A stretch of 64,000 nt of DNA from Trichosphaerium sp. ATCC 40318 (GCA_038496445.1 JALMLS010000354.1:124001-188000); one strand, 5' to 3'; counted from the stretch's first letter, positions 10,539 to 22,100 are shown. The notes: generated by a model from the letters alone, not told the origin. Translations and numbers: made by a program.

Positions 10539-11276
10539 GCTTCTGTATCAACAGTAATGTGTCACTTAATGCCGAACTCTTAACAAGGAACTAGGCGATT
10601 TTACTCGCACGTGACTTTAAAAAAACCCGATAAATTGTGCTTGGATGCCCAGTGGTGCAGATCTGACATTGTTATGTAGCCAGAAATTAAAGTAGCAAAA
10701 GCAAAATTACGTTACTTATACCAAACTTGGAACTGAGGAGCAGTTTATTATACAAGCAAGGTATTAGGTGTAAGACTGTAAGCTTCGCTTGGGTAGGCTG
10801 GTAGTACCTTGATCTCCGGTGGTATTTTCCTTGGTTTGCAAGCACTTACGCCGCCTGCAACGACAAGATTCCACGTATGTTTAAAGCTGGGATGTGTCAA
10901 ATCTGTGTCTATAAGGTGTATTAATCAGTAGTGTACTCTAATCAACCATTTCAATGAAACTAGAATAATTTACTTGTGGCTGGATGGACATCTTTTCCTC
11001 TATCACCATATTCTTTCGCTAAGTATTTTACACTATGGCGAGTAAGAGCTATGTTCTTTGGTTTACAGTACTTACCTGTAAAACACGTGTGGTTATAATA
11101 CTCAAAAACACATTCCAAATACCTTCGTATACTCCGTGCGTGTTCAAAAGCGATGTAAGTTTGTTTTAAAAGTCCAACTAATCTTATCCGCAAGAAAAAG
11201 TACCCAAGTTGGTGAATTATCAAGTTTATTCAGAAAGCCTTCTTTTCGAATACCTACCAGTACATTGCATGACGTT

Positions 11277-14200
11277 ATGAGTGAAGCGGACAAGTACGTT
11301 TTGTGATGCGTTAGCAATTTATAACAAAAGGTCGCACAGAATACGCAGGAAAAATCCACACATATGGCTACGGGCAGAGCTAAACCCAGAAGAGACAAGT
11401 ACATACATTTTTACGCTTTTTACGACTTTTCTCACTCTTTTTCGCGTAGGAGCGCCTCTGACGCCTGCACACGCTAAAGAATTGATTGGCCTCGGTTTTA
11501 AAGGTTGTTTTAGATGATTTCTCCAAGTTCATTCTTAATGTCAACCATTAGTTACCGTAGAACATTCACAAACGCGTACTTTTACAGACGCAGAATACAA
11601 AGAAGCAGGGTGCGCACAGCTTACAGCGTTTTGTTAAATGTTGCCAGCTGCTCGCTTGTTGGTAGCGGGGAATGGAAGGATGGGGATCCACATGCCGTAA
11701 TTCTAGGCCTTGGCGCACTTCCTGCTGGCGGAAATGTACGTGACAAGCAGCACAATTTAGTCAGTTGCTTGCGAACACTCTAATTAAGAGTGCGATCAGT
11801 GGTAGAGTTCTTACAAGCGGTAGGCTGATTCACCACTTTTACATCGCCATTTGTACTTTGGCTACGCCTTTAAAAAGCAGCATGCCTGGCGCGAGCTCTT
11901 ACTGCGCTATCTATTTGGAGGTGGTAAGTTACACAGTCTGCAATATTTTTGTTTACCGTAGTAACGTTGTGCGGCAGGTACACTACTTGACATTGAGTAT
12001 TTGGTCGATGACAACGGCAAACGCCTTACATCTTTCGGTAATATGGCGGGTTATATTGGTATGGCCGCAGGTGTGCTCGCCTGGGCGAGACAAGAGCTCT
12101 CACAAGTACGCAAAGAAAATGTCACAACGTCCAAGTAAGTGCATGTTTTTGACATTCACATGTAGGTAAAAATCAAAATCCCGAAAAACATGTTAAAGGA
12201 CATGGACGACACACCATTTTTTGACTACTTGAAAACATTACTTCAAACGGCTGTTACGTTCGCCAAAAGAGAACCAAAGGTTGTTGTAATTGGAGCGAAT
12301 GGATTGGTTGGTACAGGTACTTACTGACAGTCTCCAGGCTATCTCTCTGTTTGCAACCCAAATTATTATTATGCACGACTCTAAATCGTTTTCGTTAAGG
12401 CGCTGTTCTGATGGCTAACAAACTGGGCATACATGTGGACAAGTGGACTCGCAAGGAAACAAGTGAGCCAGGGCCATATCCTGTATTGTCAACAGATTAT
12501 GACATCTTGTTGAATGCAATCAAACTCGACAAGACTTGTGATACACCCTTCCTCACTGAAAATCTTGTTCGTGATCCTGCGCGATCTTTATCCGTTGTAG
12601 TGGACGTCAGTTGCGATTTTAAAAATGACAAAGTACGCTTTCATTAATATTAGAGTACGACCAGATACTAATGTAACCGCGTCCTTTAGAATCCTTTGCC
12701 AATCTACCACAAATCCACAACATTTGAAAATCCAACGCTTCGTATTTTGGACAGCGAAAAGAGACCATTGGATGTAATCGCTATCCCTACACTCGCACGG
12801 CTTTTACCCAAAGAATCTAGTCGCAACTTCTCTGGTTTGCTTATCCCACAATTGAAAGAGCTCGCCAACTACGAAACTAGCGCCGTTTGGCGTCGAGTAG
12901 TTAACGTATTTGAAGCCTCTACAAAGGGCATGAAACCACATGTAAGTCTTTTTAATTTAAAGAAAATTTTGGTGAGGAGTACTAAATATTTGATATTAAG
13001 CCGCTACCACGTGCACTGCCTCCAAGAAATCCGCTATCAGGACTACAAACCACTTTAAATCAAAGGCGTATTTGGGATTTGCATAGAACTAACAAAGCTG
13101 CTTTTAATCTGTGTCGTGCAGTGTCTATTGAAGGTACACAGCTATAACAACTATAACAAACCAAATCATCAAGCGTGTTAATCGCTTACATGGCCTTAGG
13201 CACCATCGATCCTCATAAGCTCCAAAAAGCCGCACAGAATGTGGTAGCCTCATCTGAGATTTTGCGCACTACTTTAGCGCTTGATGTTGACAACAAATTG
13301 ATACAATTGACGCAGCAAGATGTGCCAATCACTATTGCAAACAAGGACTTTAGCAGCGCCAACGATTGGGCTTCCAAATTGGACGAGCTATGCGCAGCAG
13401 AGCTACAAGTACTTTGTTCATCACGATCAATCCCAACTGTGCCCTAACACGAATAATAGAAACCATTCGATCTGTCTGTGCCACCACTCATTAGATTAGT
13501 GCTGGTTCGCAAGCCTGGAGGTCACGTACTCGTTGTTGTTGTGCATAGAATCATAGCCGATGATATCAGCGCTGATTACATTTTATTGACTATTCTCAAC
13601 GCCCTTGCTGGCCACCCGAACGCTACCTCCAACGTACCCAGAATACAACTTGTTTGGTAAAAGTTCTAAGTGCACTAAAACCATTTGATAGATACAATTC
13701 GCTGACTTTGCGCACTGGAACAGACAACGTTGGGTTGACCGACAATTGCCACGCAAGGAAGAACAGTCTCCTGTCGTCGCTAAGCCTACTGGAGAAGAAG
13801 AGGGTGTACAGCACTGGAAAGATCAACTCGGTGGCAGTGTACACATATTGCAAGTACCAATGGATAAGCCACGTTCTGCAGACCCAACATATGCTTGCAC
13901 TCGGCAGCGATTTGCTCTATCGATGGAACTTACCAAGAGCATACAACAACTTGCCAAACGAGTTTCCGGCAGACACGTACGCAGCTTGCTAGCTTTCTAA
14001 TATCACGGTACATATTAAGTGGTTATTGAAGGCGCTCTACATTACTTTGTTGTCTGCCTTTAAAGTCATGCTTTACCGGTTTACTCGAGAAGAAGACATT
14101 ATTATCGGGACTCAAGTCGATGGACGTATTCGCCCTAGCTTGCGTAACGTTATTGGCCCTTTTGGTACGTGTTATCACCCTACATACTATTTTTAATGCT

Positions 14201-17200
14201 GATTGCCATTGCAGCCAACTTGTTGCCTCTTCGCACTTTCTTGCGGGATGACATGTCTTTCCATGAGTTGATGGAAAAGGTAACAGACACCGTTGAAGCA
14301 GCATTCATAAACCAGGATGTTCCATTCGAAAAGATACTTGGCACAGTACGCGATCAAATTAAAGACGCCAACCAGGACTCTGCCTTGTTTCAAGTTGTTT
14401 TCAATTATGAACAACATAATGAATACCCTCTCCCATCTTCAGTTAGATCCTTCCAAGTGCGTCATGAACATATGCCTCTGAAGCCGTGTTGGTGCTAACC
14501 TTACCATTAAAAGGTGAAACGCCTTCCTTTGAGCGTTGGCCATTCAGCATTTGATCTATCCATGTCTGTATCTGTAGATCACCAAATTCAGTACGTTTGT
14601 CAATACTGTGGAATATACTGACACAAGACAACAGTGTGGATTTGCAGTACAATAACCAACTCATCAATGGAGCACGTGTTGAAGAGATTGGTCTTCAATT
14701 TCAATTGTTGTTGAAACAAATTGTACAAAACCCAGAAGCCAACATCTTGGAATACACACTCATTACTGGTACACCACCAATTCACACTGGTTTTCAAAAA
14801 ACTAATCATTGCTCCAGACGCTGCAAAAAGTAAACTTTGCGATCCAACTACACCCCTCGACAGCACGTGGTTGGGTTCTATTCAATCTTTCCTCACCAAA
14901 AATGTGCGCATGTTCCAATGGCTTCTCAGTCTAACATATTCTCTAGGCTAAGAAAGCAGGAAAGCGTATTGCTATGGCATACCAAGGTAAAACCTACACA
15001 TACTCTCAGTTGGAAGGTTGGGCAAACCAACTTGCAAACCTCCTTATCAAGAAGGGCATAAAAAAGTCTGACTTTGTGGGCATTTACGGTCACCGCTCGC
15101 CTCCTGTAGTTATTGCAATCATTGCTATCCTCAAAACAGGTGCAGGATACACCATGATGGATCCTGCTTATCCTTTTGAAAGGATAAAGGCATGCTTGGG
15201 CATCGCCAATCCAAAAGGGTATCGTCACTGCAAAATGTTGCATGTAGGTTTACAGTACCACTAGGTGGCTCGCCATTGAAGAAGCTGGACAAGCACCAAA
15301 ACAACTTTCTCGCTTCTTGGATGAGAGTGTGCGTACTGCAACGATTAGTCGGTATATATTTGTTAGCTAAAGATTACGTTCCCAGGGACTGCTAGCCAAC
15401 ATTTCGTTACCTCCTTTACATAAACTAGAAAAGAGTGGTTTGTTCAAGGACATTCCTATCACATGCCCAGACGTCACCACAGGTAAACTTTACTCTTCTA
15501 TTCCTTTTCATCGCTTGTACACACAACTTACCCGGTTCATCAAAGGCCCTGATGACGTAGCTGTTGTTACATTCACTTCAGGCTCAACAGGAGTGCCAAA
15601 GGGTGTTATGGGAAGACACATTTCCTTGACTCACTTTTATCCTTGGATGGGTGAGAGATTTGGCATCACTCAAGACGACAGGTAATCCTTTTATAGCCAT
15701 TAATGTCTGGATTACTAAGCAAAGAAATTAGATTCTCCATGGTCTCAGGTATTGCTCACGATCCTCTTCAGAGAGATATATTTACGCCATTGTATTTTGG
15801 CGCACCAATATACATCCCAACACAGGACGACATTAACAATCCTGGACAACTCGGAGAGGTATCTTCATAAAAATTTGTTGATCGTAATACTAATCATTGA
15901 CAAGTGGATGCGCGATAACAAAATCAACGTTACATGTATGACACCTGCTCTTGGTCAAATATTGACAACTGTGGATAACCCATCATTCACTATCGACTCA
16001 TTGAAGCTTTCCTTCTTTGTTGGCGATTGCCTCATTAAACGTGACGTATACCGTTTGATGAAGCTTGCACCAAATGGCAAAGTCATCAACATGTACGGCT
16101 CAACCGAAACACAGAGATCAGTTGGTTACTTTGAAGTACGTGCAATAATTGTGTAGCTAAAAGAGTCACTAACTATCCATGATAAGGTACCAACAGGTCC
16201 AGCTTTGGCTGCTTTGAAAGAGGTCATTCCTTGCGGTGTAGGTATGAAGGACGTGCAATTGGTTCTTCTTAACAACGCTGGACGCCTTCTTGGTGTCGGT
16301 GAAACAGGCGAGATTTACGTGAGAAGTCACCACCTCGCCAAGGGTACGTACTAGCTTGTTTTACCTCAGTTCTGACTTGGGTTTGTTTGTAGGATACATC
16401 GGTCTTGAGAAACAAACAAAGGCGAGATTTATTCAAAATCCATTCTCTACTGTGGATGGAGACAGATTTTATAAGACTGGCGATCTTGGTCGCTACTCTA
16501 ACGAAGGCATCATCGAATGCTTGGGACGTGCCGACGATCAAATTAAGATTAGAGGATTCAGGATTGAGCTTGGAGAGATAAACGCCACGTTGAGCCTCCA
16601 TCCTTCCGTTAAGGTTTGTCATTATTTCGAAGCCTAAAAACCAGGTATGTGGGGCTAATCAAATACCTCTAGGAAAATGTGACTATTGTGCGTGAAGACA
16701 TACCTGGTCAAAAGAGAATATGCGCATACGTCGTACCTAGCTCGTTGAACGAGAAGGGTATTCACCAATCAGGAAGCATTGACATCCAGGCGATCACAGA
16801 CAAACTTAAAACTTTCTTGAAAAAGAAACTGCCACATTACATGGTGCCAACACACATTATCATCTTGCAAGCCATGCCGCTCACACCAAACGGTAAAATC
16901 AACCGTCGCATTCTCCCATCCCCAGAGAAACGACAAAGCTCGTACGATCTCGCAATTCTCTCTAATACACAAGAGAGACTAGTCAAGATTTGGGCTAAAG
17001 TACTTCAATGCGAGATTGAAAGCATTGAAGACAACTTTTTCGACCTTGGAGGTACGCCAGCCTCGCAGATTTAAGGGTAGTTTATTGACTAATTACCATT
17101 TCCAGGACACTCAGTGCTGGCTACACGCCTAACCTTCGAAATGAAGAACGCCTTCAAAATCAACATTCCTATGCAGTTGTTGTTTCAAGCGCCAACAATT

Positions 17201-19069
17201 GGCGAACTAGCAAAGGCTATTGACGCTTTAAAGGTAATAAATATACAAAGTTGTTTCCCAGCACTAACATATGTCATAAACAGAAAGGTAACGTTGCAAC
17301 TACCAAGCCACAGGCTGTTATCGACTTGGAACGTGAAGCACAACTTGATGAATCAATTCATCCAGCCAAGAACATCCTTCCAGCTGTTGAAAAGAGTAAA
17401 ATACGTAATATTCTTTTAACTGGTGCCACTGGTTTCCTCGGCGCCTTTTTGTTACAAAGCCTCCTTTTACAAACAAAGGTACGTTCCTAGAACATAGTAG
17501 CAGTGAGGGTGTACCCATAATACTTACACAAATGATTAAGGGAACAATCATTCATTGCCATTGTCGAGCCAAGAATGAAGAAGAAGGTTACAAACGCCTA
17601 GAGAAAAACTTGAAAGCACATATGATTTGGCAAGACGATGTACGCAATCTAACACTATGTTACTGTTTACTAACGTTTGTTGTAGTTCGTTGGCAGATTC
17701 CGTGCTGTACCTGGTGATTTGGGCTATCCTCTACTGAGCTGGAGCCAAGAATTGTTTGACAGCCTCGCTGAAAAGATTGACCTCATCATCCACAATGGTA
17801 CCAAAATTGCACTTATAGTTATAGATCACTGGTGTTGACGTTGTTTGTTCCTATCAGGTGCTCTTGTCCATTGGATACTACCATACGATAAATTGAAGCC
17901 GGTGAACGTAGTTGGTACCGTAGAAGTATTGAGATTCGCCTGCACAACCAAACTCAAGCCTGTGCACTACGTATCTACAACCAGTGTGCTCGACACGCTA
18001 CACCACAAGAAATTGAAGGTAGTATACGAGAACGACATGTTGCCGAGTTGCGAGGGCTTGACTGGAGGATACCCTCAAACAAAGTGGGTCGCTGAACGTC
18101 TCCTGATGCAAGCGAGAGAGCGTGGTGTCCCTGTATCATGCTACCGACCTGGTTACGTTGTTGGTGATTCCATTAACGGTGTATTTAACACTGACGATTT
18201 TCTGGCCCGTCTAATGAAGGTACTGGACGGAACCCGTCTTTATTTTGTCTAACTGTCTAAATTAGGGTTGCGTACAATTGAAGTGTTACCCTACACTATC
18301 CAACACATTGGACATGAGCTCTGTACGTATAATATCAACCACCACAGCATACAGTGGCCGTTTGTTACTGATGCTTGTACATAGGTTGATTACGTATGTC
18401 AATCCATTGCCCACCTTGCTGTATCCGGTCCTACGAGCAACAAGGTATGCCTATTACCACCCCCCCCATTTTGATTACCATTAACTGGTTGTTTCTTTGT
18501 TTAGACGTTCCACACTGTCAATCCTAATCTGTACTCATTCGCAAGTCTGTTCAAGACGATAAAATCTTTCGGCTACGAGCTGGAGGAAGTGCCTTTCAAG
18601 GAATGGACAGAAAAGCTAATTGCTGTTTGCGAAGACAATAACGAGAACAATGCCCTGAGCTCTATGCTCGGTCAGTTCACAGCAGATTGGGCCGATATGA
18701 CCAAGAACCCAATTTACGATTGCAGGTACACCACCCGCTTTGATTATACCAAAAAAAACCACCACACTTACCCAGCACTAACGCGTTCTCGAAGCAACAC
18801 CAAGGAAGGTATAAAGGAAGCCAAAATAACATGCCCTCAAATGGATGCGCTTGTAGTGACATTCTTCTCGTACTTTATTGGATGCTCGTACGTGACGTGG
18901 TTCACAATACCCAAAACAAAACTTGGATTGCACATACTAACTTAGCCCTAGATTCATTGACCCTCCTCCAAAGAGCCCTAACAACGCCCTAAACATCAAC
19001 TGGAATAAAATCAAAAAGGGAGTACAAGCGTTAACTAGAACAAATAGACACGACGCTTCTAAAAAATAA
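11277..19069 (+). CDS. LYS2: Multidomain alpha-aminoadipate reductase: degenerate saccharopine dehydrogenase (Lys1-like) - condensation-like - adenylation - thiolation - reductase
   Basis: Lys1-like HIWLRAE..RAPLTP, LLDIEYL..GKRLTSFG, VVDVSCD..NPLPIY; C domain QRRIW..HRIIADD..QDVPFE; A domain FTSGSTGVPKGVMGRH, SGIAHDPLQRDIFTPL, NMYGSTETQRSV (Lys2 signatures), YKTGDLGR; T domain NFFDLGGHS; R domain LTGATGFLG, GYPQTKWVAE. Start codon inferred. Confidence 0.9.
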
Positions 19070-19159: not shown

Positions 19160-22100
19160 CTAGACATAGCTATAAATCATGCTTGGCGTGTACCTGAGCT
19201 CAGTTAAATATCCTTTCATGATCTGCGAAAAAGAAGGGATTGTTAACCACGCCACCATATTATTTGAAAACGCACCTTTATCATAACTGGCGGTCCACAA
19301 AGCACGATAAGCGTGTCGTCTGCTGGTGGAGGCATATGCTTCTCTATCATCTCTTCGGTAATGAAACCAGTGCCCATTGTCCAATTACGAGGAGGCTGGC
19401 AAAGCGTCAGATGTGACAATGGTATTAGGTTAGCGATAACATCTTACCTCAGACAACGTGATGAACATGTCAATGTTTGTCCGCGTCATAGTGTAGTACA
19501 TTAAAACGTCACGGCAAAGGATATCCTCTTCTTTTAGGTTGCCATACAACAATGTAAATTGTGTTGTATCCTCAGGGTGCCTTGCAGCTGAGTTTATAAT
19601 CTATAGAACAATTTAACACGTGTTTTTCACAAAACAATATTATTTTGTAGTTACCTGAACCATTGGAGAAATACCGGTGCCACCTCCAACAATAGTTAGG
19701 AGACAAGCTTGGTAAATATATGGGCGTACCTGCAATCATGCCAACGTTTTTCCACTTTAACCTGTGATATTCCAAGCCACCTAGAGGCCCTTTCAAGTCA
19801 AGAGTGTCACCCACCTTCATGTTGTTAAAATGAGTGCACATTGAGCCTGGTGTTAGTTTATCTTTTTCAATCTATGGTGCAAGTGAGTTTTACCAACCTG
19901 CAATATAACACTAGAGTATACCTTCACAAGCAAGCTTATGCTGCCGTAATCGGAGTTGCGCGAGATGGGCGAATAATACCTAACTACCTCTTTGCCTTCT
20001 AATTCCGCCCTAAACAACTCGAGTGAGCCATTGTCTAATCTACCTCCTTTTGTCATTAAAATAGAACTGCAAGTACCTAACAGCAATGTACTGGCCAGTG
20101 TACATCCCAGCGTGATTGGCTTCCTCAGGAAATGCGAATGTGAATACTACGTTGTGCTCATTCATCGCAACCTTGGAGCGCAGTGTCAAAGGTACGAACT
20201 TATCGGGATGCAGTGCTACAAGGCGGCGAGTTTTAGTTGTACGTGATGTAAGAAGTGACATTGTACCTCGCTTGTGCAGGACTCCTTTTTCATCAACAAA
20301 GTCAGGTTTTACATTGGTACTTCCAATGCCTCTGTCTCCAACGTGCTGCGCTGCTTCATTGCCCGCAATGCGTCCAAAAACAACGCACTGAGCGGCAGAA
20401 TCTGGTTAATACTAGGCACTAAAAACACAGCAATCTTGTCAATGTACCTCAAGCAACGAATTTCCACCAAGTCTATTATTCCCGTGAAGACCGCCAGTGG
20501 CTTCGCCAGCTGCGTACAAACCTGATATAACTTTGCCATCCGTATTGAGTACTTGTGTCTTTTGATTAAACTGTACGCCACCCCTTTTCCAATGGTTAAA
20601 ACTATCGGCTCCACTTAAAAATACATAAACTGAACGTACATAGTGTAGTGAATAGATGGTGTTGTCATGACAACATCTCAATAATTAAAGAAGAACACGT
20701 GGTGAGCAGGTTTTAGAAAAAAATTGACAAAGGGGTGGTGAGGATACAAATCTTTTTAGCCGGATCGAAAGTTAAAGGAACATCGTCGATGGCATAAAAC
20801 TGGCTCTTTCCAAACGGATCGTTGCCTTCTTTCGCTGCCTTAGCGTGTTGACTCAGCGTTTCTTTGATGCAAGTCTCTTCGCATCCAATAAAGGCTGCGG
20901 TTGCAGTAGCATCAGCACACTCGGTGATCAAACCTATCCTGTCTGGTGGGCTAGATATTAGTTGCCAAGTTTGAAGCGTTATTTTGGTGCCTTTGTAGAA
21001 GGAAAATAGCTTCTGGCCAAATGCGGCTGCCATTTCTTCAGTGAGCAGAAGATAGCACACGATTGGAACGATCTGTCCTTCACCAGGTTTAGCGTCAGAC
21101 TTGTCATACTTGGCACAATTCTTGAAAATTGCATTGGATACTACATCTCTGTAGGTAAGTTCATCCACAAACCGATTTCCTTTGTTATTTACCAGAATCT
21201 AAAACGCCTATTAGTGCTCGACTGTCATTAAGAGCAACGTACGCCACCATATCCGCGGAAAGCCTCCGGTGCTAGGAACTTTTTACGCTCGAAAGGTTTT
21301 TTGGGATGAACCTTGGTGCGTCACATTAGGGACGATAGCCTCATCCGAGGAAAAAATGTAAAATGGATTTTTAATTGCGTACAATTCCAGTTGGGTGCAC
21401 TTGTATCTAGGACAATTAGAAAAAGAGATGACTGTGAAATACATTACCTCCTTCATGTCTACAACATTTGCTCCAATTTGTTGAGCCATTGTTACGCCCT
21501 AGCAGTTTATGAGCCAAATCCAACCCAGGCTAGCCAAACTACTTTACCTCTCCGAGTGCAAAAGGACCATTTGTAGTAGGAAGTTTACTTACTTCCTCGC
21601 TAGCGTACTTTCCCAAAAGCGCATCTGACGCTGAAAATCTACGAAGACAAAGTGTCAATAAAGGAATCATCGAAACAGTTCATACCCTCCCGTAGTTAGT
21701 ACCACACTGTCCGCGAACAAATTAATCTTTTTGAGATGTTAGTTGTAGTTGACAGATTTGTTCTACCGTACGTTGAGTGTATGCACTTCAAATTTCTGAG
21801 TGCATCTCACGCCGACCACCTAGCGCCGCCAATACATTAGTGATAAATAACCTATCGATGGCGTACTGCGCCTTTGTCGTTGATCAAGAGTCTGTTTGCC
21901 TCAGTATTGAGTAATACGCGCATTCTTGACTTGTCCAGCGTGTCAACGTGCGTGATGAGCGCTTTCATAATGTGTCCTCCCATATTCTCTAGTCTTCCGT
22001 CTGCTCTTGGCTTCGCTCTGTGTGTGCGGGTTGCCTATAATTAGGTTAATAACATACAAAGGCATGCGATAAACGCTGTGGAGAAGTATACTCACCGAAT

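What the first reader, a model, noticed from the sequence alone, without database searches (positions are those of the whole stretch)
11277..19069. Lys2 (alpha-aminoadipate reductase) fused to a catalytically degenerate Lys1 domain: possible built-in end-product sensor
Seen: the saccharopine dehydrogenase-like region splices in frame (..KGMKPH|PLPRALPP..) into C-A-T-R, giving one polypeptide. Against yeast Lys1 as I recall it, the catalytic residues are lost (GLKEMP->GLGALP, K77/E78; FAHCYK->FGYAFK, H96; IDHLP->IPTLA, D319), while substrate-binding R18, K99, E122, R131 and the GxxGxxG loop are retained. Established: Lys2 and Lys1 are separate, non-consecutive enzymes of the fungal AAA lysine pathway. 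Inference: the domain is a pseudoenzyme that binds lysine/saccharopine and allosterically regulates the reductase, in a non-fungal protist. I know of no description of this architecture.
Basis: partly seen in the sequence, partly recalled or inferred. Interest (0 to 1): 0.85.

Follow-up and report, generated by a model that had tools for sequence, protein, structure and literature searches.

The report
Aminoadipate reductase fused to crippled Lys1
This amoeba makes one 1,941-residue protein that joins a lysine-pathway reductase (Lys2) to a copy of another lysine-pathway enzyme (Lys1) that has lost its catalytic residues; the same fusion is conserved in several distant protists, sits unremarked in databases, and its function is untested.

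Summary
RNA-derived contigs show a GT..AG splice 12941>13001 that joins the last Lys1-like exon in frame to the next exon. My 37-exon model (11277-19069, 1,941 aa) is collinear end to end with a 1,927-aa single-ORF metatranscriptome protein.

Architecture: Lys1-like, then a full condensation domain, then A-T-R of the Lys2 type.

Against yeast Lys1 the window has K13N, K77G, E78A, H96Y, D227T, I228R, D319P and H320T. It keeps R18, K99, E122, R131 and the glycine loop.

This is not a one-off. At least 11 sequence clusters (Phalansterium, Rigifila, environmental) form one well-supported clade. All of them have D319P and I228R, and none has K77. The Thr/Ser-Arg pair matches the NADPH-specific human homologue (PMC9490328). 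The domain evolves as slowly as the catalytic domains. One relative has a canonical Lys9-Lys1 gene next door.

Best reading: a conserved module that no longer catalyses the Lys1 reaction but still binds ligand and NADP(H), and regulates or scaffolds the reductase. A new enzymatic activity is not excluded. I found no paper describing the architecture.

The parts
11277..19069 (+). Whole gene: 37 exons, 36 GT..AG introns of 37-88 nt, coding for 1,941 aa (Lys1-like, C, A, T, R)
   Evidence: Gene model. Twenty introns are confirmed by spliced contigs. The model is collinear with P0157, P0176 and other relatives.
11277..12941 (+). Exons 1-10: Lys1-like (AlaDh_PNT fold) N-domain, aa 1-383, lacking the catalytic pair
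   Evidence: Exons align to yeast Lys1 structures. The family profile hits 2Q99 at E 1.4e-93 over its full length. It is 43% identical to the stand-alone Lys1 P0009.
11712..11717 (+). Codons for Gly88-Ala89, at the positions of yeast K77-E78 (GLKEMP becomes GLGALP)
   Evidence: RNA contigs cover the exon and report no differences.
11863..11865 (+). Codon TAC for Tyr109, at the position of yeast H96. This change is unique to the window within the fused clade.
12447..12452 (+). Codons for Thr238-Arg239, at yeast D227-I228: an NADP(H)-type signature like human LOR Ser266-Arg267
   Evidence: Literature: PMC9490328, PMC13763937.
12786..12791 (+). Codons for Pro332-Thr333, at yeast D319-H320. The partner of the K99-D319 inter-lobe latch is lost. 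Pro is invariant in the fused clade.
   Evidence: Literature: PMC13763937.
12942..13000 (+). The 59-nt intron whose removal joins the Lys1-like domain in frame to the condensation domain
   Evidence: Joint 12941>13001, GT..AG, in an X1 contig that also carries the 13131>13198 joint.
13001..14879 (+). Full-length condensation-like domain (aa 384-870) with a degenerate active-site motif HRIIADD (13544-13564) in place of HHxxxDG
   Evidence: Collinear Pfam Condensation hits over profile positions 39-447 of 456 across exons 12-18. P0157 hits Condensation over residues 378-845. Motif coordinates.
14947..16870 (+). Adenylation domain (aa 879-1400), Lys2-type, with core motifs intact (TSGSTGVPKG, GRADDQIKIRGFRIE)
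   Evidence: Pfam AMP-binding. The specificity-region exons hit TIGR03443 best or exclusively. Motifs.
16943..17233 (+). Carrier (T/PCP) domain with the phosphopantetheine-attachment Ser1463 (17111-17113) in LGGHS
   Evidence: PP-binding hit. Coordinates.
17284..19069 (+). Thioester reductase (R) domain with TGATGFLG (17419-17442) and YPQTK (18070-18084); stop codon at 19067-19069
   Evidence: NAD_binding_4 at 3e-30 and TIGR01746/TIGR03443 hits. The C-terminus ..LTRTNRH.. is shared with P0157.

Best explanation
The locus is one expressed gene for an alpha-aminoadipate reductase (Lys2 type). Its A, T and R domains carry all the usual motifs, so it most likely activates 2-aminoadipate, loads it on the phosphopantetheine arm and reduces it with NADPH to the semialdehyde.

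In front of this reductase sit two extra modules. The first is a complete condensation domain with a dead active-site motif; fungi keep only its C-terminal half, known as the 'ADA' domain. The second, at the very N-terminus, is a full-length paralogue of saccharopine dehydrogenase (Lys1).

This Lys1-like module belongs to an old, monophyletic lineage found only in such fusions. That lineage has lost the catalytic lysine, and in this amoeba the catalytic histidine as well. It has also lost the Asp that latches the two lobes. It keeps the residues that hold the carboxylates of saccharopine or 2-oxoglutarate, keeps the dinucleotide loop, and has switched to an NADP(H)-type Thr-Arg signature.

I infer that it no longer carries out the Lys1 reaction. 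Instead it most likely works as a ligand- and NADP(H)-binding module that tunes or scaffolds the reductase.

Shown: the fusion, the residue pattern, family conservation and purifying selection. Inferred: ligand binding, regulation, and the identity of the ligand.
For: One gene, one protein:
- The in-frame splice is seen in RNA contigs.
- The model is collinear end to end with single-ORF relatives on 5.9-kb transcript contigs and on intron-free genomic contigs.

Lys2 identity:
- P0157 scores 1139.7 bits on TIGR03443 (cut-off 1030.1).
- The window's specificity-region exons hit TIGR03443 best.
- All A, T and R motifs are present.

Loss of Lys1 catalysis:
- K77G, E78A and H96Y in the window.
- K77 is R or G in every clade member for which the position is known, against K in 49 of 51 stand-alone Lys1.
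- K77 and H96 are the accepted acid-base pair, conserved as K93 and H111 in human LOR (PMC13763937 and the Kumar 2012 title it cites).

Retained binding:
- R18, K99, E122 (Ala in P0018 only), R131 and the glycines are kept wherever the position is covered.
- Q101 is invariant in the 8-row alignment of relatives (as Q99 of P0157) and is also Gln in the window (Gln114).
- T/S/G/R-R at 227-228 parallels S266-R267 of NADPH-specific LOR (PMC9490328).

A functional domain, not decay:
- The clade has SH-aLRT support of 100.
- N-domain identity to relatives is 44-57%, against 20-35% for the C domain and 38-50% for R.
- dN is 0.127, the lowest of all domains, in one pair; dN/dS is 0.27 against 0.21-0.36 for the other large domains (A, R, C) in another pair.
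- The N-domain tree and the A-T-R tree agree in the groupings they share.

Catalysis not needed by the pathway:
- A relative's contig carries a canonical Lys9-Lys1 gene (GLKELP, FAHCYK, WDL, IDHLP) beside the fused gene.
- H96 is lost only in the window, yet the domain stays conserved there.
Against: - No binding or activity data exist for any member.
- An invariant Arg at position 228, a conserved nicotinamide-side sequence (VDVSCD..NPLPIY) and H96 kept in 10 of 11 members are also what a working NADPH-dependent enzyme with altered chemistry would show.
- The Lys9-Lys1 neighbour is seen in one organism only and is absent from the same position in a close relative. I could not check whether Trichosphaerium has separate LYS1 and LYS9 genes.
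- Sixteen of the 36 introns, including all ten after 16899, are predicted rather than read from RNA.
- By my recollection, K77 and H96 mutants of yeast Lys1 keep some residual activity, so 'dead' is relative.
Confidence: 0.5

Rival explanations
1. The N-domain is a re-tooled enzyme. Under this reading it is an NADPH-dependent reductase that acts on the aldehyde made by the R domain. It might condense it with glutamate to give saccharopine (a Lys9-like step), or reduce its cyclic imine P6C to pipecolate. The fusion would then channel an unstable intermediate between consecutive steps.
For: - The NADP-type Thr-Arg pair replaces Asp-Ile exactly as in NADPH-dependent human LOR (PMC9490328).
- The glycine loop and all three carboxylate binders are kept, and H96 is kept in 10 of 11 clade members.
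- Purifying selection is as strong as on the catalytic domains.
- Gene fusions usually join consecutive steps (general knowledge).
Against: - No residue replacing K77 is fixed in the clade (R, G), and position 78 varies (D, V, A, P). A new catalytic mechanism would be expected to fix its residues.
- The window has also lost H96 yet keeps the domain.
- One relative has a canonical Lys9-Lys1 gene on the same contig, so a Lys9-like activity would be redundant there.
Confidence: 0.25
2. The N-domain is a purely structural adaptor. It might help the A domain fold or work, as the ADA/C* domain does. Or, as a dead Lys1 paralogue, it might pair with the live Lys1 domain of a Lys9-Lys1 enzyme and so tie the last three pathway steps into one complex. 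Small-molecule sensing would play no part.
For: - Fungal ADA and ACVS C* domains are non-catalytic yet essential for aminoadipate activation (PMC7884236).
- Human LOR assembles through LOR-LOR contacts into a tetramer (PMC9490328, PMC13763937).
- A Lys9-Lys1 gene lies next to the fused gene in one relative.
- The Lys1-type catalytic pair decays while the domain is retained.
Against: - A purely structural role does not explain the invariance of ligand-binding R18, R131, K99 and Q101, of the glycine loop and of Arg228.
- By my recollection yeast Lys1 is a monomer.
- The gene adjacency is not conserved in a close relative.
Confidence: 0.15
3. The N-domain still works as an ordinary, if slow, saccharopine dehydrogenase, making the protein a bifunctional Lys1+Lys2 enzyme.
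For: - It is 43% identical to stand-alone Lys1 over its full length.
- A Planoprotostelium model (PRP80975.1) joins a Lys1 domain that keeps K77, E78, D227 and D319 (but has N at H96) to a Lys2.
- By my recollection, single K77 or H96 mutants of the yeast enzyme retain measurable activity.
Against: - Both acid-base residues, E78, K13, the NAD-ribose Asp and the latch Asp are all replaced in the window.
- The Planoprotostelium protein lies outside the derived clade in both trees, has a different architecture (C-lobe only) and is a singleton that could be a merged gene model.
Confidence: 0.07
4. Artefact: two neighbouring genes (LYS1-like and LYS2) are joined only by read-through or by an assembly or annotation error.
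For: - Only one contig of one run bridges the 12941>13001 joint.
- Contigs cannot prove a single full-length transcript (caveat stated).
Against: - The joint is a canonical GT..AG intron that keeps the frame, and there is no stop codon at the end of the Lys1-like part.
- The same junction lies inside single uninterrupted ORFs in at least 8 independent sources. These include 5.9-kb metatranscriptome contigs and intron-free genomic contigs.
- The two halves give matching tree groupings.
Confidence: 0.03

Closest known systems
Fungal alpha-aminoadipate reductase Lys2 / NPS3 (ADA-A-T-R; NCBIfam TIGR03443)
   Same: It has the same A-T-R core, with Lys2-specific matches in the substrate-specificity region. 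It also has the carrier serine and the reductase GxxGxxG and YxxxK motifs. The relative P0157 passes the equivalog cut-off.
   Different: Fungal Lys2 starts with only the C-lobe of a condensation domain, the 'ADA' domain (PMC7884236, PMC12041015). Here the whole condensation domain is present (profile positions 39-447 of 456), and a 383-residue Lys1-like domain precedes it.
Saccharopine dehydrogenase Lys1 of S. cerevisiae (PDB 2Q99, 2QRJ-L, 3UGK)
   Same: Full-length homology: family profile E 1.4e-93 and about 43% identity to stand-alone Lys1. R18, K99, Q101, E122, R131 and the glycine-rich loop are kept.
   Different: K13N, K77G, E78A, H96Y, D227T, I228R, D319P and H320T. It is never found stand-alone: every P319-type hit among the 150 best is either a fusion or a fragment of 233 aa or fewer, at least one of which (P0001) runs on into condensation-domain sequence.
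[quoted passage not shown]
   Same: It is a Lys1 homologue fused to another lysine-pathway enzyme. Its NADPH preference is set by Ser266-Arg267 at the place of yeast D227 (PMC9490328, PMC13763937). The fused clade has Thr/Ser/Gly/Arg followed by Arg at the same position.
   Different: LOR keeps the catalytic Lys93 and His111 and the latch Asp358, and it is catalytically active. Its fusion partner is a Lys9 homologue, not Lys2.
Planoprotostelium fungivorum PRP80975.1 / UniProt A0A2P6NAJ1 (1,767 aa)
   Same: It is an amoebozoan database entry that joins an AlaDh_PNT Lys1 domain to a Lys2.
   Different: Its Lys1 part keeps K77, E78, D227 and D319 (H96 reads N). It is followed by the C-lobe only. 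It falls outside the derived clade in both trees. No second example was found, so it may be a merged gene model.
C* domain of ACV synthetase module 1 and ADA domain of NPS3
   Same: These are non-catalytic condensation-derived modules in front of an aminoadipate-activating A domain, and they are needed for adenylation (PMC7884236).
   Different: Those lack the N-lobe and the HHxxxDG region altogether. Here the N-lobe is present with a degenerate motif (HRIIADD).

Membership tests
Lys2-type alpha-aminoadipate reductase (TIGR03443) | Adenylation domain with the Lys2-specific sequence in the specificity region | tested here: met
   Window exons 22-24 hit TIGR03443 best, at 64.3, 66.6 (the only hit) and 90.4 bits, against 46.9, none and 39.8 bits for the generic adenylation model. 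P0157, which is 49.6% identical, scores 1139.7 bits against a cut-off of 1030.1. The spliced window protein could not be scored as a whole because it has no reference.
Lys2-type alpha-aminoadipate reductase (TIGR03443) | Carrier domain with a phosphopantetheine-attachment serine | tested here: met
   LGGHS with Ser1463 at 17111-17113, plus a PP-binding hit.
Lys2-type alpha-aminoadipate reductase (TIGR03443) | C-terminal thioester reductase with an NADPH loop and YxxxK | tested here: met
   NAD_binding_4 at 3e-30 and TIGR01746 at 139 bits; motifs TGATGFLG and YPQTK are present.
Lys2-type alpha-aminoadipate reductase (TIGR03443) | Reduces 2-aminoadipate to the semialdehyde after priming by a PPTase | not testable with these tools
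   This needs an enzyme assay or complementation of a yeast lys2 mutant.
Saccharopine dehydrogenase, L-lysine-forming (Lys1, EC 1.5.1.7) | Two-lobe AlaDh_PNT fold, homologous over the full length | tested here: met
   Exons align to 3UGK at E 9e-10, 1.6e-3 and 8.4e-6. The clade profile hits 2Q99 at E 1.4e-93. The fold itself was not modelled.
Saccharopine dehydrogenase, L-lysine-forming (Lys1, EC 1.5.1.7) | Acid-base pair Lys77 / His96 | tested here: not met
   The window has Gly and Tyr at these positions. The role of the pair is taken from PMC13763937 and the Kumar 2012 title it cites.
Saccharopine dehydrogenase, L-lysine-forming (Lys1, EC 1.5.1.7) | NAD-type Asp227 at the adenine ribose | tested here: not met
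   Thr-Arg replaces Asp-Ile. That is the NADPH-type pattern of human LOR (PMC9490328).
Saccharopine dehydrogenase, L-lysine-forming (Lys1, EC 1.5.1.7) | Carboxylate-binding Arg18 and Arg131 plus Lys99 | tested here: met
   All three are kept in the window and across the clade.
NRPS condensation domain (PF00668) | Both lobes present | tested here: met
   Collinear hits over profile positions 39-447 of 456 across seven exons. P0157 hits over 8-455 of 456 at 195.7 bits.
NRPS condensation domain (PF00668) | Catalytic HHxxxDG motif with the second His | tested here: not met
   The window has HRIIADD. Relatives have H-[RQS]-x-x-x-D-[EDK].
Regulatory pseudoenzyme (ligand-sensing dead paralogue) | Binds the ancestral ligand and changes the activity of the attached enzyme | not testable with these tools
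   Only indirect support: conserved pocket residues, loss of catalytic residues, and purifying selection.

The most novel reading that the evidence does not exclude
An ancient dead paralogue of Lys1, found only in fusions, has been built into the aminoadipate reductase of several deep protist lineages (Amoebozoa, CRuMs and unnamed environmental eukaryotes). It would act as an NADP(H)- and saccharopine/lysine-sensing switch, or as a docking module that ties Lys2 to a Lys9-Lys1 enzyme. That would be a mode of controlling or channelling lysine biosynthesis not known from fungi. The same proteins keep a complete condensation domain, which would show that Lys2 descends from an NRPS elongation module.
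Probability: 0.4. Interest if true: 0.75.

Novelty: new variant of a known kind. Interest (0 to 1): 0.6.

Why it matters
The aminoadipate pathway is usually treated as a fungal trait with separate Lys2, Lys9 and Lys1 enzymes. Recent reviews describe Lys2 only as ADA-A-T-R (PMC12041015).

Here a different and apparently older layout is conserved across distant protists. It has a full condensation domain and a catalytically crippled, NADP-type Lys1 paralogue that selection maintains as tightly as the active domains.

If that paralogue senses pathway products or cofactor, it would be a natural case of an enzyme recruited as a regulator of another step in its own pathway. It would also be directly testable with recombinant protein.

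If instead it is a new NADPH-dependent enzyme, the pathway in these organisms has an undescribed step or a channelled one.

Either way, the full condensation domain supports the proposal that Lys2 and the ACVS first module derive from an NRPS elongation module (PMC7884236).

Tried and rejected
Gene modelling:
- A minimal-intron search skipped real exons. A pure codon-score search over-spliced; for example it cut out 13011-13121, which an RNA contig shows to be exon. I fixed the RNA-supported introns and curated the rest using frame, splice scores and Lys2 collinearity.

Searches on the Lys1-like exons:
- Pfam on single exons found nothing, and exon 5 alone found no structure. The exons are too short. 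PDB phmmer on the longer exons, a clade profile and local alignments solved this.
- The spliced protein has no reference, so it could not be handed to the database tools. Exons were searched separately, and whole-protein work was done in scripts.

Literature:
- Searches for K77/H96/D319 found nothing in the searchable library. The Kumar 2012 paper is not held. Residue roles are therefore taken from PMC13763937 and PMC9490328.
- Four literature searches and one review check found no description of the fusion.

Planoprotostelium:
- I considered its protein as the ancestral, still-active state of the fusion. I rejected this as shown, because it lies in another Lys2 lineage, has only the C-lobe, and is a singleton.

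Gene neighbourhood:
- I considered a conserved Lys2 / Lys9-Lys1 gene cluster. The adjacency is absent in a close relative and in the window.

- I could not establish whether Trichosphaerium has separate LYS1 and LYS9 genes.
- Earlier scan notes hold nothing on saccharopine.
- Read laying was given exactly 6,000 letters.

Full report
**1. What is in the sequence**

The region is an intron-rich eukaryotic gene on the + strand. It has no long ORFs; coding segments of 17-379 nt alternate between frames.

I laid four public runs on window 10900-16899, which is 6,000 letters, the limit set by the operators. The contigs are spliced. They give 20 GT..AG joints inside the gene.

The joint that matters most is 12941>13001. 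It skips 59 nt, and the same X1 contig carries the next joint, 13131>13198. Exon 10 ends ..AAA CCA CAT (K P H). Exon 11 begins CCG CTA CCA (P L P). The Lys1-like part therefore runs into the next domain in frame, with no stop codon.

A loose end (CGGACAA before 11331) also confirms the 37-nt first intron, and so the ATG at 11277.

**2. The gene model**

The first automatic models were wrong in places. I then fixed the RNA-supported introns and chose the other 16 using frame, splice-site scores and collinearity with Lys2.

- Result: 37 exons, 11277-19069, 1,941 residues.
- The model aligns over residues 16-1936 with residues 4-1926 of P0157 at 49.6% identity.
- In a multiple alignment with seven relatives, the only window-specific indels of 4 or more residues are the N-terminal tip and a 21-residue loop.
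- One X1 contig of 1,550 nt runs about 980 nt of spliced sequence past 16899 (table 8).
- The ten introns beyond 16899 were not read from RNA.

**3. Domains**

- Exons 12-18 hit Pfam Condensation collinearly from profile position 39 to 447 of 456.
- Later exons hit AMP-binding, AMP-binding_C, PP-binding and NAD_binding_4.
- Against NCBIfam, the exons that carry the specificity pocket hit the Lys2 equivalog TIGR03443 best or exclusively. Exon 23 gives 66.6 bits as its only hit. Exon 24 gives 90.4 bits against 39.8 for the generic adenylation model.
- The A3, A8 and A10 motifs, the carrier serine (LGGHS), the reductase loop TGATGFLG and YPQTK are all present.
- The condensation motif reads HRIIADD instead of HHxxxDG, so the catalytic second histidine is missing.

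Fungal Lys2 has only the C-lobe of such a domain, the non-catalytic but essential 'ADA' domain (PMC7884236, PMC12041015). In agreement with that, TIGR03443 starts matching P0157 only at residue 573, in the middle of its condensation domain.

**4. The N-terminal domain**

Single exons were too short for Pfam, but they align to yeast Lys1 structures:

| Exon | 3UGK residues | E-value |
|---|---|---|
| 10 | 287-362 | 9e-10 |
| 6 | 86-114 | 1.6e-3 |
| 9 | 215-284 | 8.4e-6 |

The spliced domain is 43% identical to a stand-alone Lys1 (P0009) over 372 residues.

Using the yeast numbering given by those alignments and by P0009 against 2Q99, the window shows the following.

- Changed: K13N, K77G, E78A, H96Y, D227T, I228R, D319P, H320T.
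- Retained: R18, K99, Q101, E122, R131 and the four glycines of the dinucleotide loop.

RNA contigs cover the G77/A78 and Y96 codons without differences.

One correction is needed. Structural work describes D319 (human D358) as the partner of K99 (human K114) in a salt-bridge latch between the two lobes, not as a catalytic residue. K77 and H96 (human K93 and H111) are the catalytic pair. R18 and R131 (human R39 and R146) hold the saccharopine carboxylates (PMC13763937).

**5. It is a family, not a one-off**

An exhaustive HMMER search with exon 10 found, among its best 150 hits, proteins of 1,275-1,853 residues with the match near their N-terminus. Further searches and cluster look-ups added more.

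- Members: P0157, 1,927 aa, on three full-length 5.9-kb transcript contigs from JGI metatranscriptomes and an SRA run.
- Members: P0176, 1,930 aa, from Phalansterium solitarium.
- Members: P0050, from Rigifila ramosa.
- Members: P0018, P0190, P0002, P0169 and P0170, from Logan assemblies.
- Members: P0152 and P0192, from JGI/NCBI/ENA, on intron-free genomic contigs.

Pfam on the full-length relatives gives AlaDh_PNT_N + Condensation + AMP-binding + PP-binding + NAD_binding_4.

In a tree of 66 Lys1-type domains, the 11 fused N-domains form one clade with SH-aLRT 100 on a long stem. In the A-T-R tree the same proteins fall inside one clade (SH-aLRT 96) that also holds forms without the Lys1-like domain. 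The groupings the two trees share agree: P0018 with P0190, P0152 with P0192, and P0157 with P0170, P0002 and P0169. The window sits next to Arcella. This fits one old fusion inherited as a unit.

Every P319-type sequence among the 150 hits is either a long fusion or a fragment of 233 aa or fewer. At least one fragment (P0001) runs on into condensation-domain sequence. No stand-alone full-length version appeared.

**6. The clade's residue pattern**

| Yeast position | Fused clade | 51 stand-alone Lys1 |
|---|---|---|
| K77 | R (5) or G (3) | K in 49 |
| E78 | D, V, A or P | E in 49 |
| D319 | always P | D in 49 |
| I228 | always R | varied |
| D227 | T, S, G or R | D in 40 |
| H96 | H in all but the window | H in 49 |
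| R18, K99, R131, glycines | kept | kept |
| E122 | kept in all but P0018 (A) | kept in 50 |

The Thr/Ser-Arg pair is what human LOR uses to select NADPH. Ser266-Arg267 sit where yeast has the aspartate that binds the NAD ribose, and they contact the 2'-phosphate (PMC9490328, PMC13763937). I therefore infer that the domain still binds a dinucleotide, now NADP(H), and a carboxylate-rich ligand. It lacks the base needed for Lys1 chemistry and lacks the lobe latch.

**7. Is the domain maintained?**

Yes.

| Domain | Window's identity to five relatives |
|---|---|
| N-domain | 44-57% |
| Condensation | 20-35% |
| R | 38-50% |
| A | 54-64% |

Between P0002 and P0169, synonymous sites are saturated. 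The N-domain has the lowest dN: 0.127, against 0.140 for A, 0.179 for R and 0.238 for C.

Between P0192 and P0152, dN/dS is 0.27 for the N-domain, against 0.21 for A, 0.24 for R and 0.36 for C.

**8. Does the pathway need its catalysis?**

On the contig that carries P0192, the convergent neighbour encodes a protein of about 780-800 residues. It has Sacchrp_dh_NADP + Sacchrp_dh_C + AlaDh_PNT_N. Its Lys1 part is canonical: GLKELP, FAHCYK, WDL, IDHLP.

That organism therefore has ordinary Lys9 and Lys1 activities as well as the fusion.

The adjacency is not conserved in the close relative P0152 or in the window. I use it only as evidence that the two co-occur in one genome. I could not test whether Trichosphaerium has its own LYS1 and LYS9.

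**9. Explanations**

The evidence best fits a module that has given up the Lys1 reaction but keeps its pockets and acts on the attached reductase.

Points in favour:
- The old catalytic pair decays stepwise (K to R to G; H to Y in the window) without any new residue becoming fixed.
- Binding residues are invariant.
- Purifying selection is strong.
- Canonical Lys9-Lys1 co-occurs in one relative.

From memory, lysine inhibits aminoadipate reductase in some fungi, so regulation at this step is not far-fetched.

The main rival is a re-tooled NADPH-dependent enzyme that takes the aldehyde from the R domain, in a Lys9-like or imine-reductase-like reaction. The NADP signature, the intact nicotinamide-side sequence and the general rule that fusions join consecutive steps support it. 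The variable residues at positions 77 and 78, the loss of H96 in the window, and the neighbouring Lys9-Lys1 gene weigh against it.

A purely structural or docking role, residual Lys1 activity, and an artefact are less likely. Reasons are given with each rival.

**10. Comparison with what is known, and novelty**

The core is a Lys2-type reductase. The relative P0157 passes NCBIfam's equivalog cut-off, and the window's exons match that model best.

The N-domain is homologous to Lys1 but fails three of its defining features: K77, H96 and the NAD-type D227. It should not be filed as a saccharopine dehydrogenase, which is how UniRef names the Planoprotostelium protein.

That Planoprotostelium entry (PRP80975.1 / A0A2P6NAJ1) is a different case. 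It has a Lys1 domain that keeps K77, E78, D227 and D319 (but reads N at H96), plus the C-lobe only. It lies in another Lys2 lineage and has no second example. It may be an independent fusion or a merged gene model.

The architecture is thus already present in public data under automatic names. I found no paper that mentions it, and a 2025 review gives Lys2 only as ADA-A-T-R.

I rate it a new variant of a known kind: real, conserved and testable, but with function still inferred.

The organism name Trichosphaerium comes from an earlier AI note of this scan. The tree position beside Arcella is consistent with an amoebozoan origin.

Noticed in passing
L005:7009-9348 (-), beside P0192 at L005:1157-6952 (+): A bifunctional Lys9-Lys1 gene lies tail to tail with the fused Lys2 gene of a relative. 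It has Sacchrp_dh_NADP + Sacchrp_dh_C + AlaDh_PNT_N, and its Lys1 part is canonical (GLKELP, FAHCYK, WDL, IDHLP). Together the two genes cover the last three steps of the aminoadipate pathway. The adjacency is not kept in the close relative P0152 (L006).
   Followed up: yes
window 13001-14879 (motif at 13544-13564): Protist Lys2 proteins keep a complete condensation domain: the fused clade, plus diplonemid and chlorarachniophyte forms with about 450-530 residues before the A domain. Fungal Lys2 has only the C-lobe 'ADA' domain. This looks like the intermediate predicted by the idea that Lys2 derives from an NRPS elongation module.
   Followed up: partly
window 11277-19069: All 36 introns of the gene are short (37-88 nt). 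The donor consensus is GTACGT rather than GTAAGT.
   Followed up: partly
window 19160-19841 (-): The convergent downstream gene has FAD_binding_6 and NAD_binding_1 pieces, as in cytochrome-b5-reductase-like flavoenzymes. It has no obvious link to lysine synthesis.
   Followed up: partly
L007:12023-13336 (-) and L008:6702-8018 (-): In two related environmental contigs, a malic-enzyme gene (malic + Malic_M) lies convergent just downstream of the fused Lys2 gene. This may simply be shared synteny between close relatives.
   Followed up: no
window 12273, 13540, 14725, 15780, 16024 and others (table 3): RNA contigs from three studies differ from the window at scattered single bases. One low-depth contig has a 2-nt gap at 15519. 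The cause is probably strain differences or contig errors. None of the differences touches the residues discussed here.
   Followed up: no
P0213 (Planoprotostelium fungivorum PRP80975.1): This database protein joins a 124-residue leader, a Lys1 domain that keeps K77, E78, D227 and D319 (but has N at H96), and an ADA-A-T-R Lys2. UniRef names it 'Saccharopine dehydrogenase'. It is either a second, independent Lys1-Lys2 fusion or a merged gene model.
   Followed up: partly
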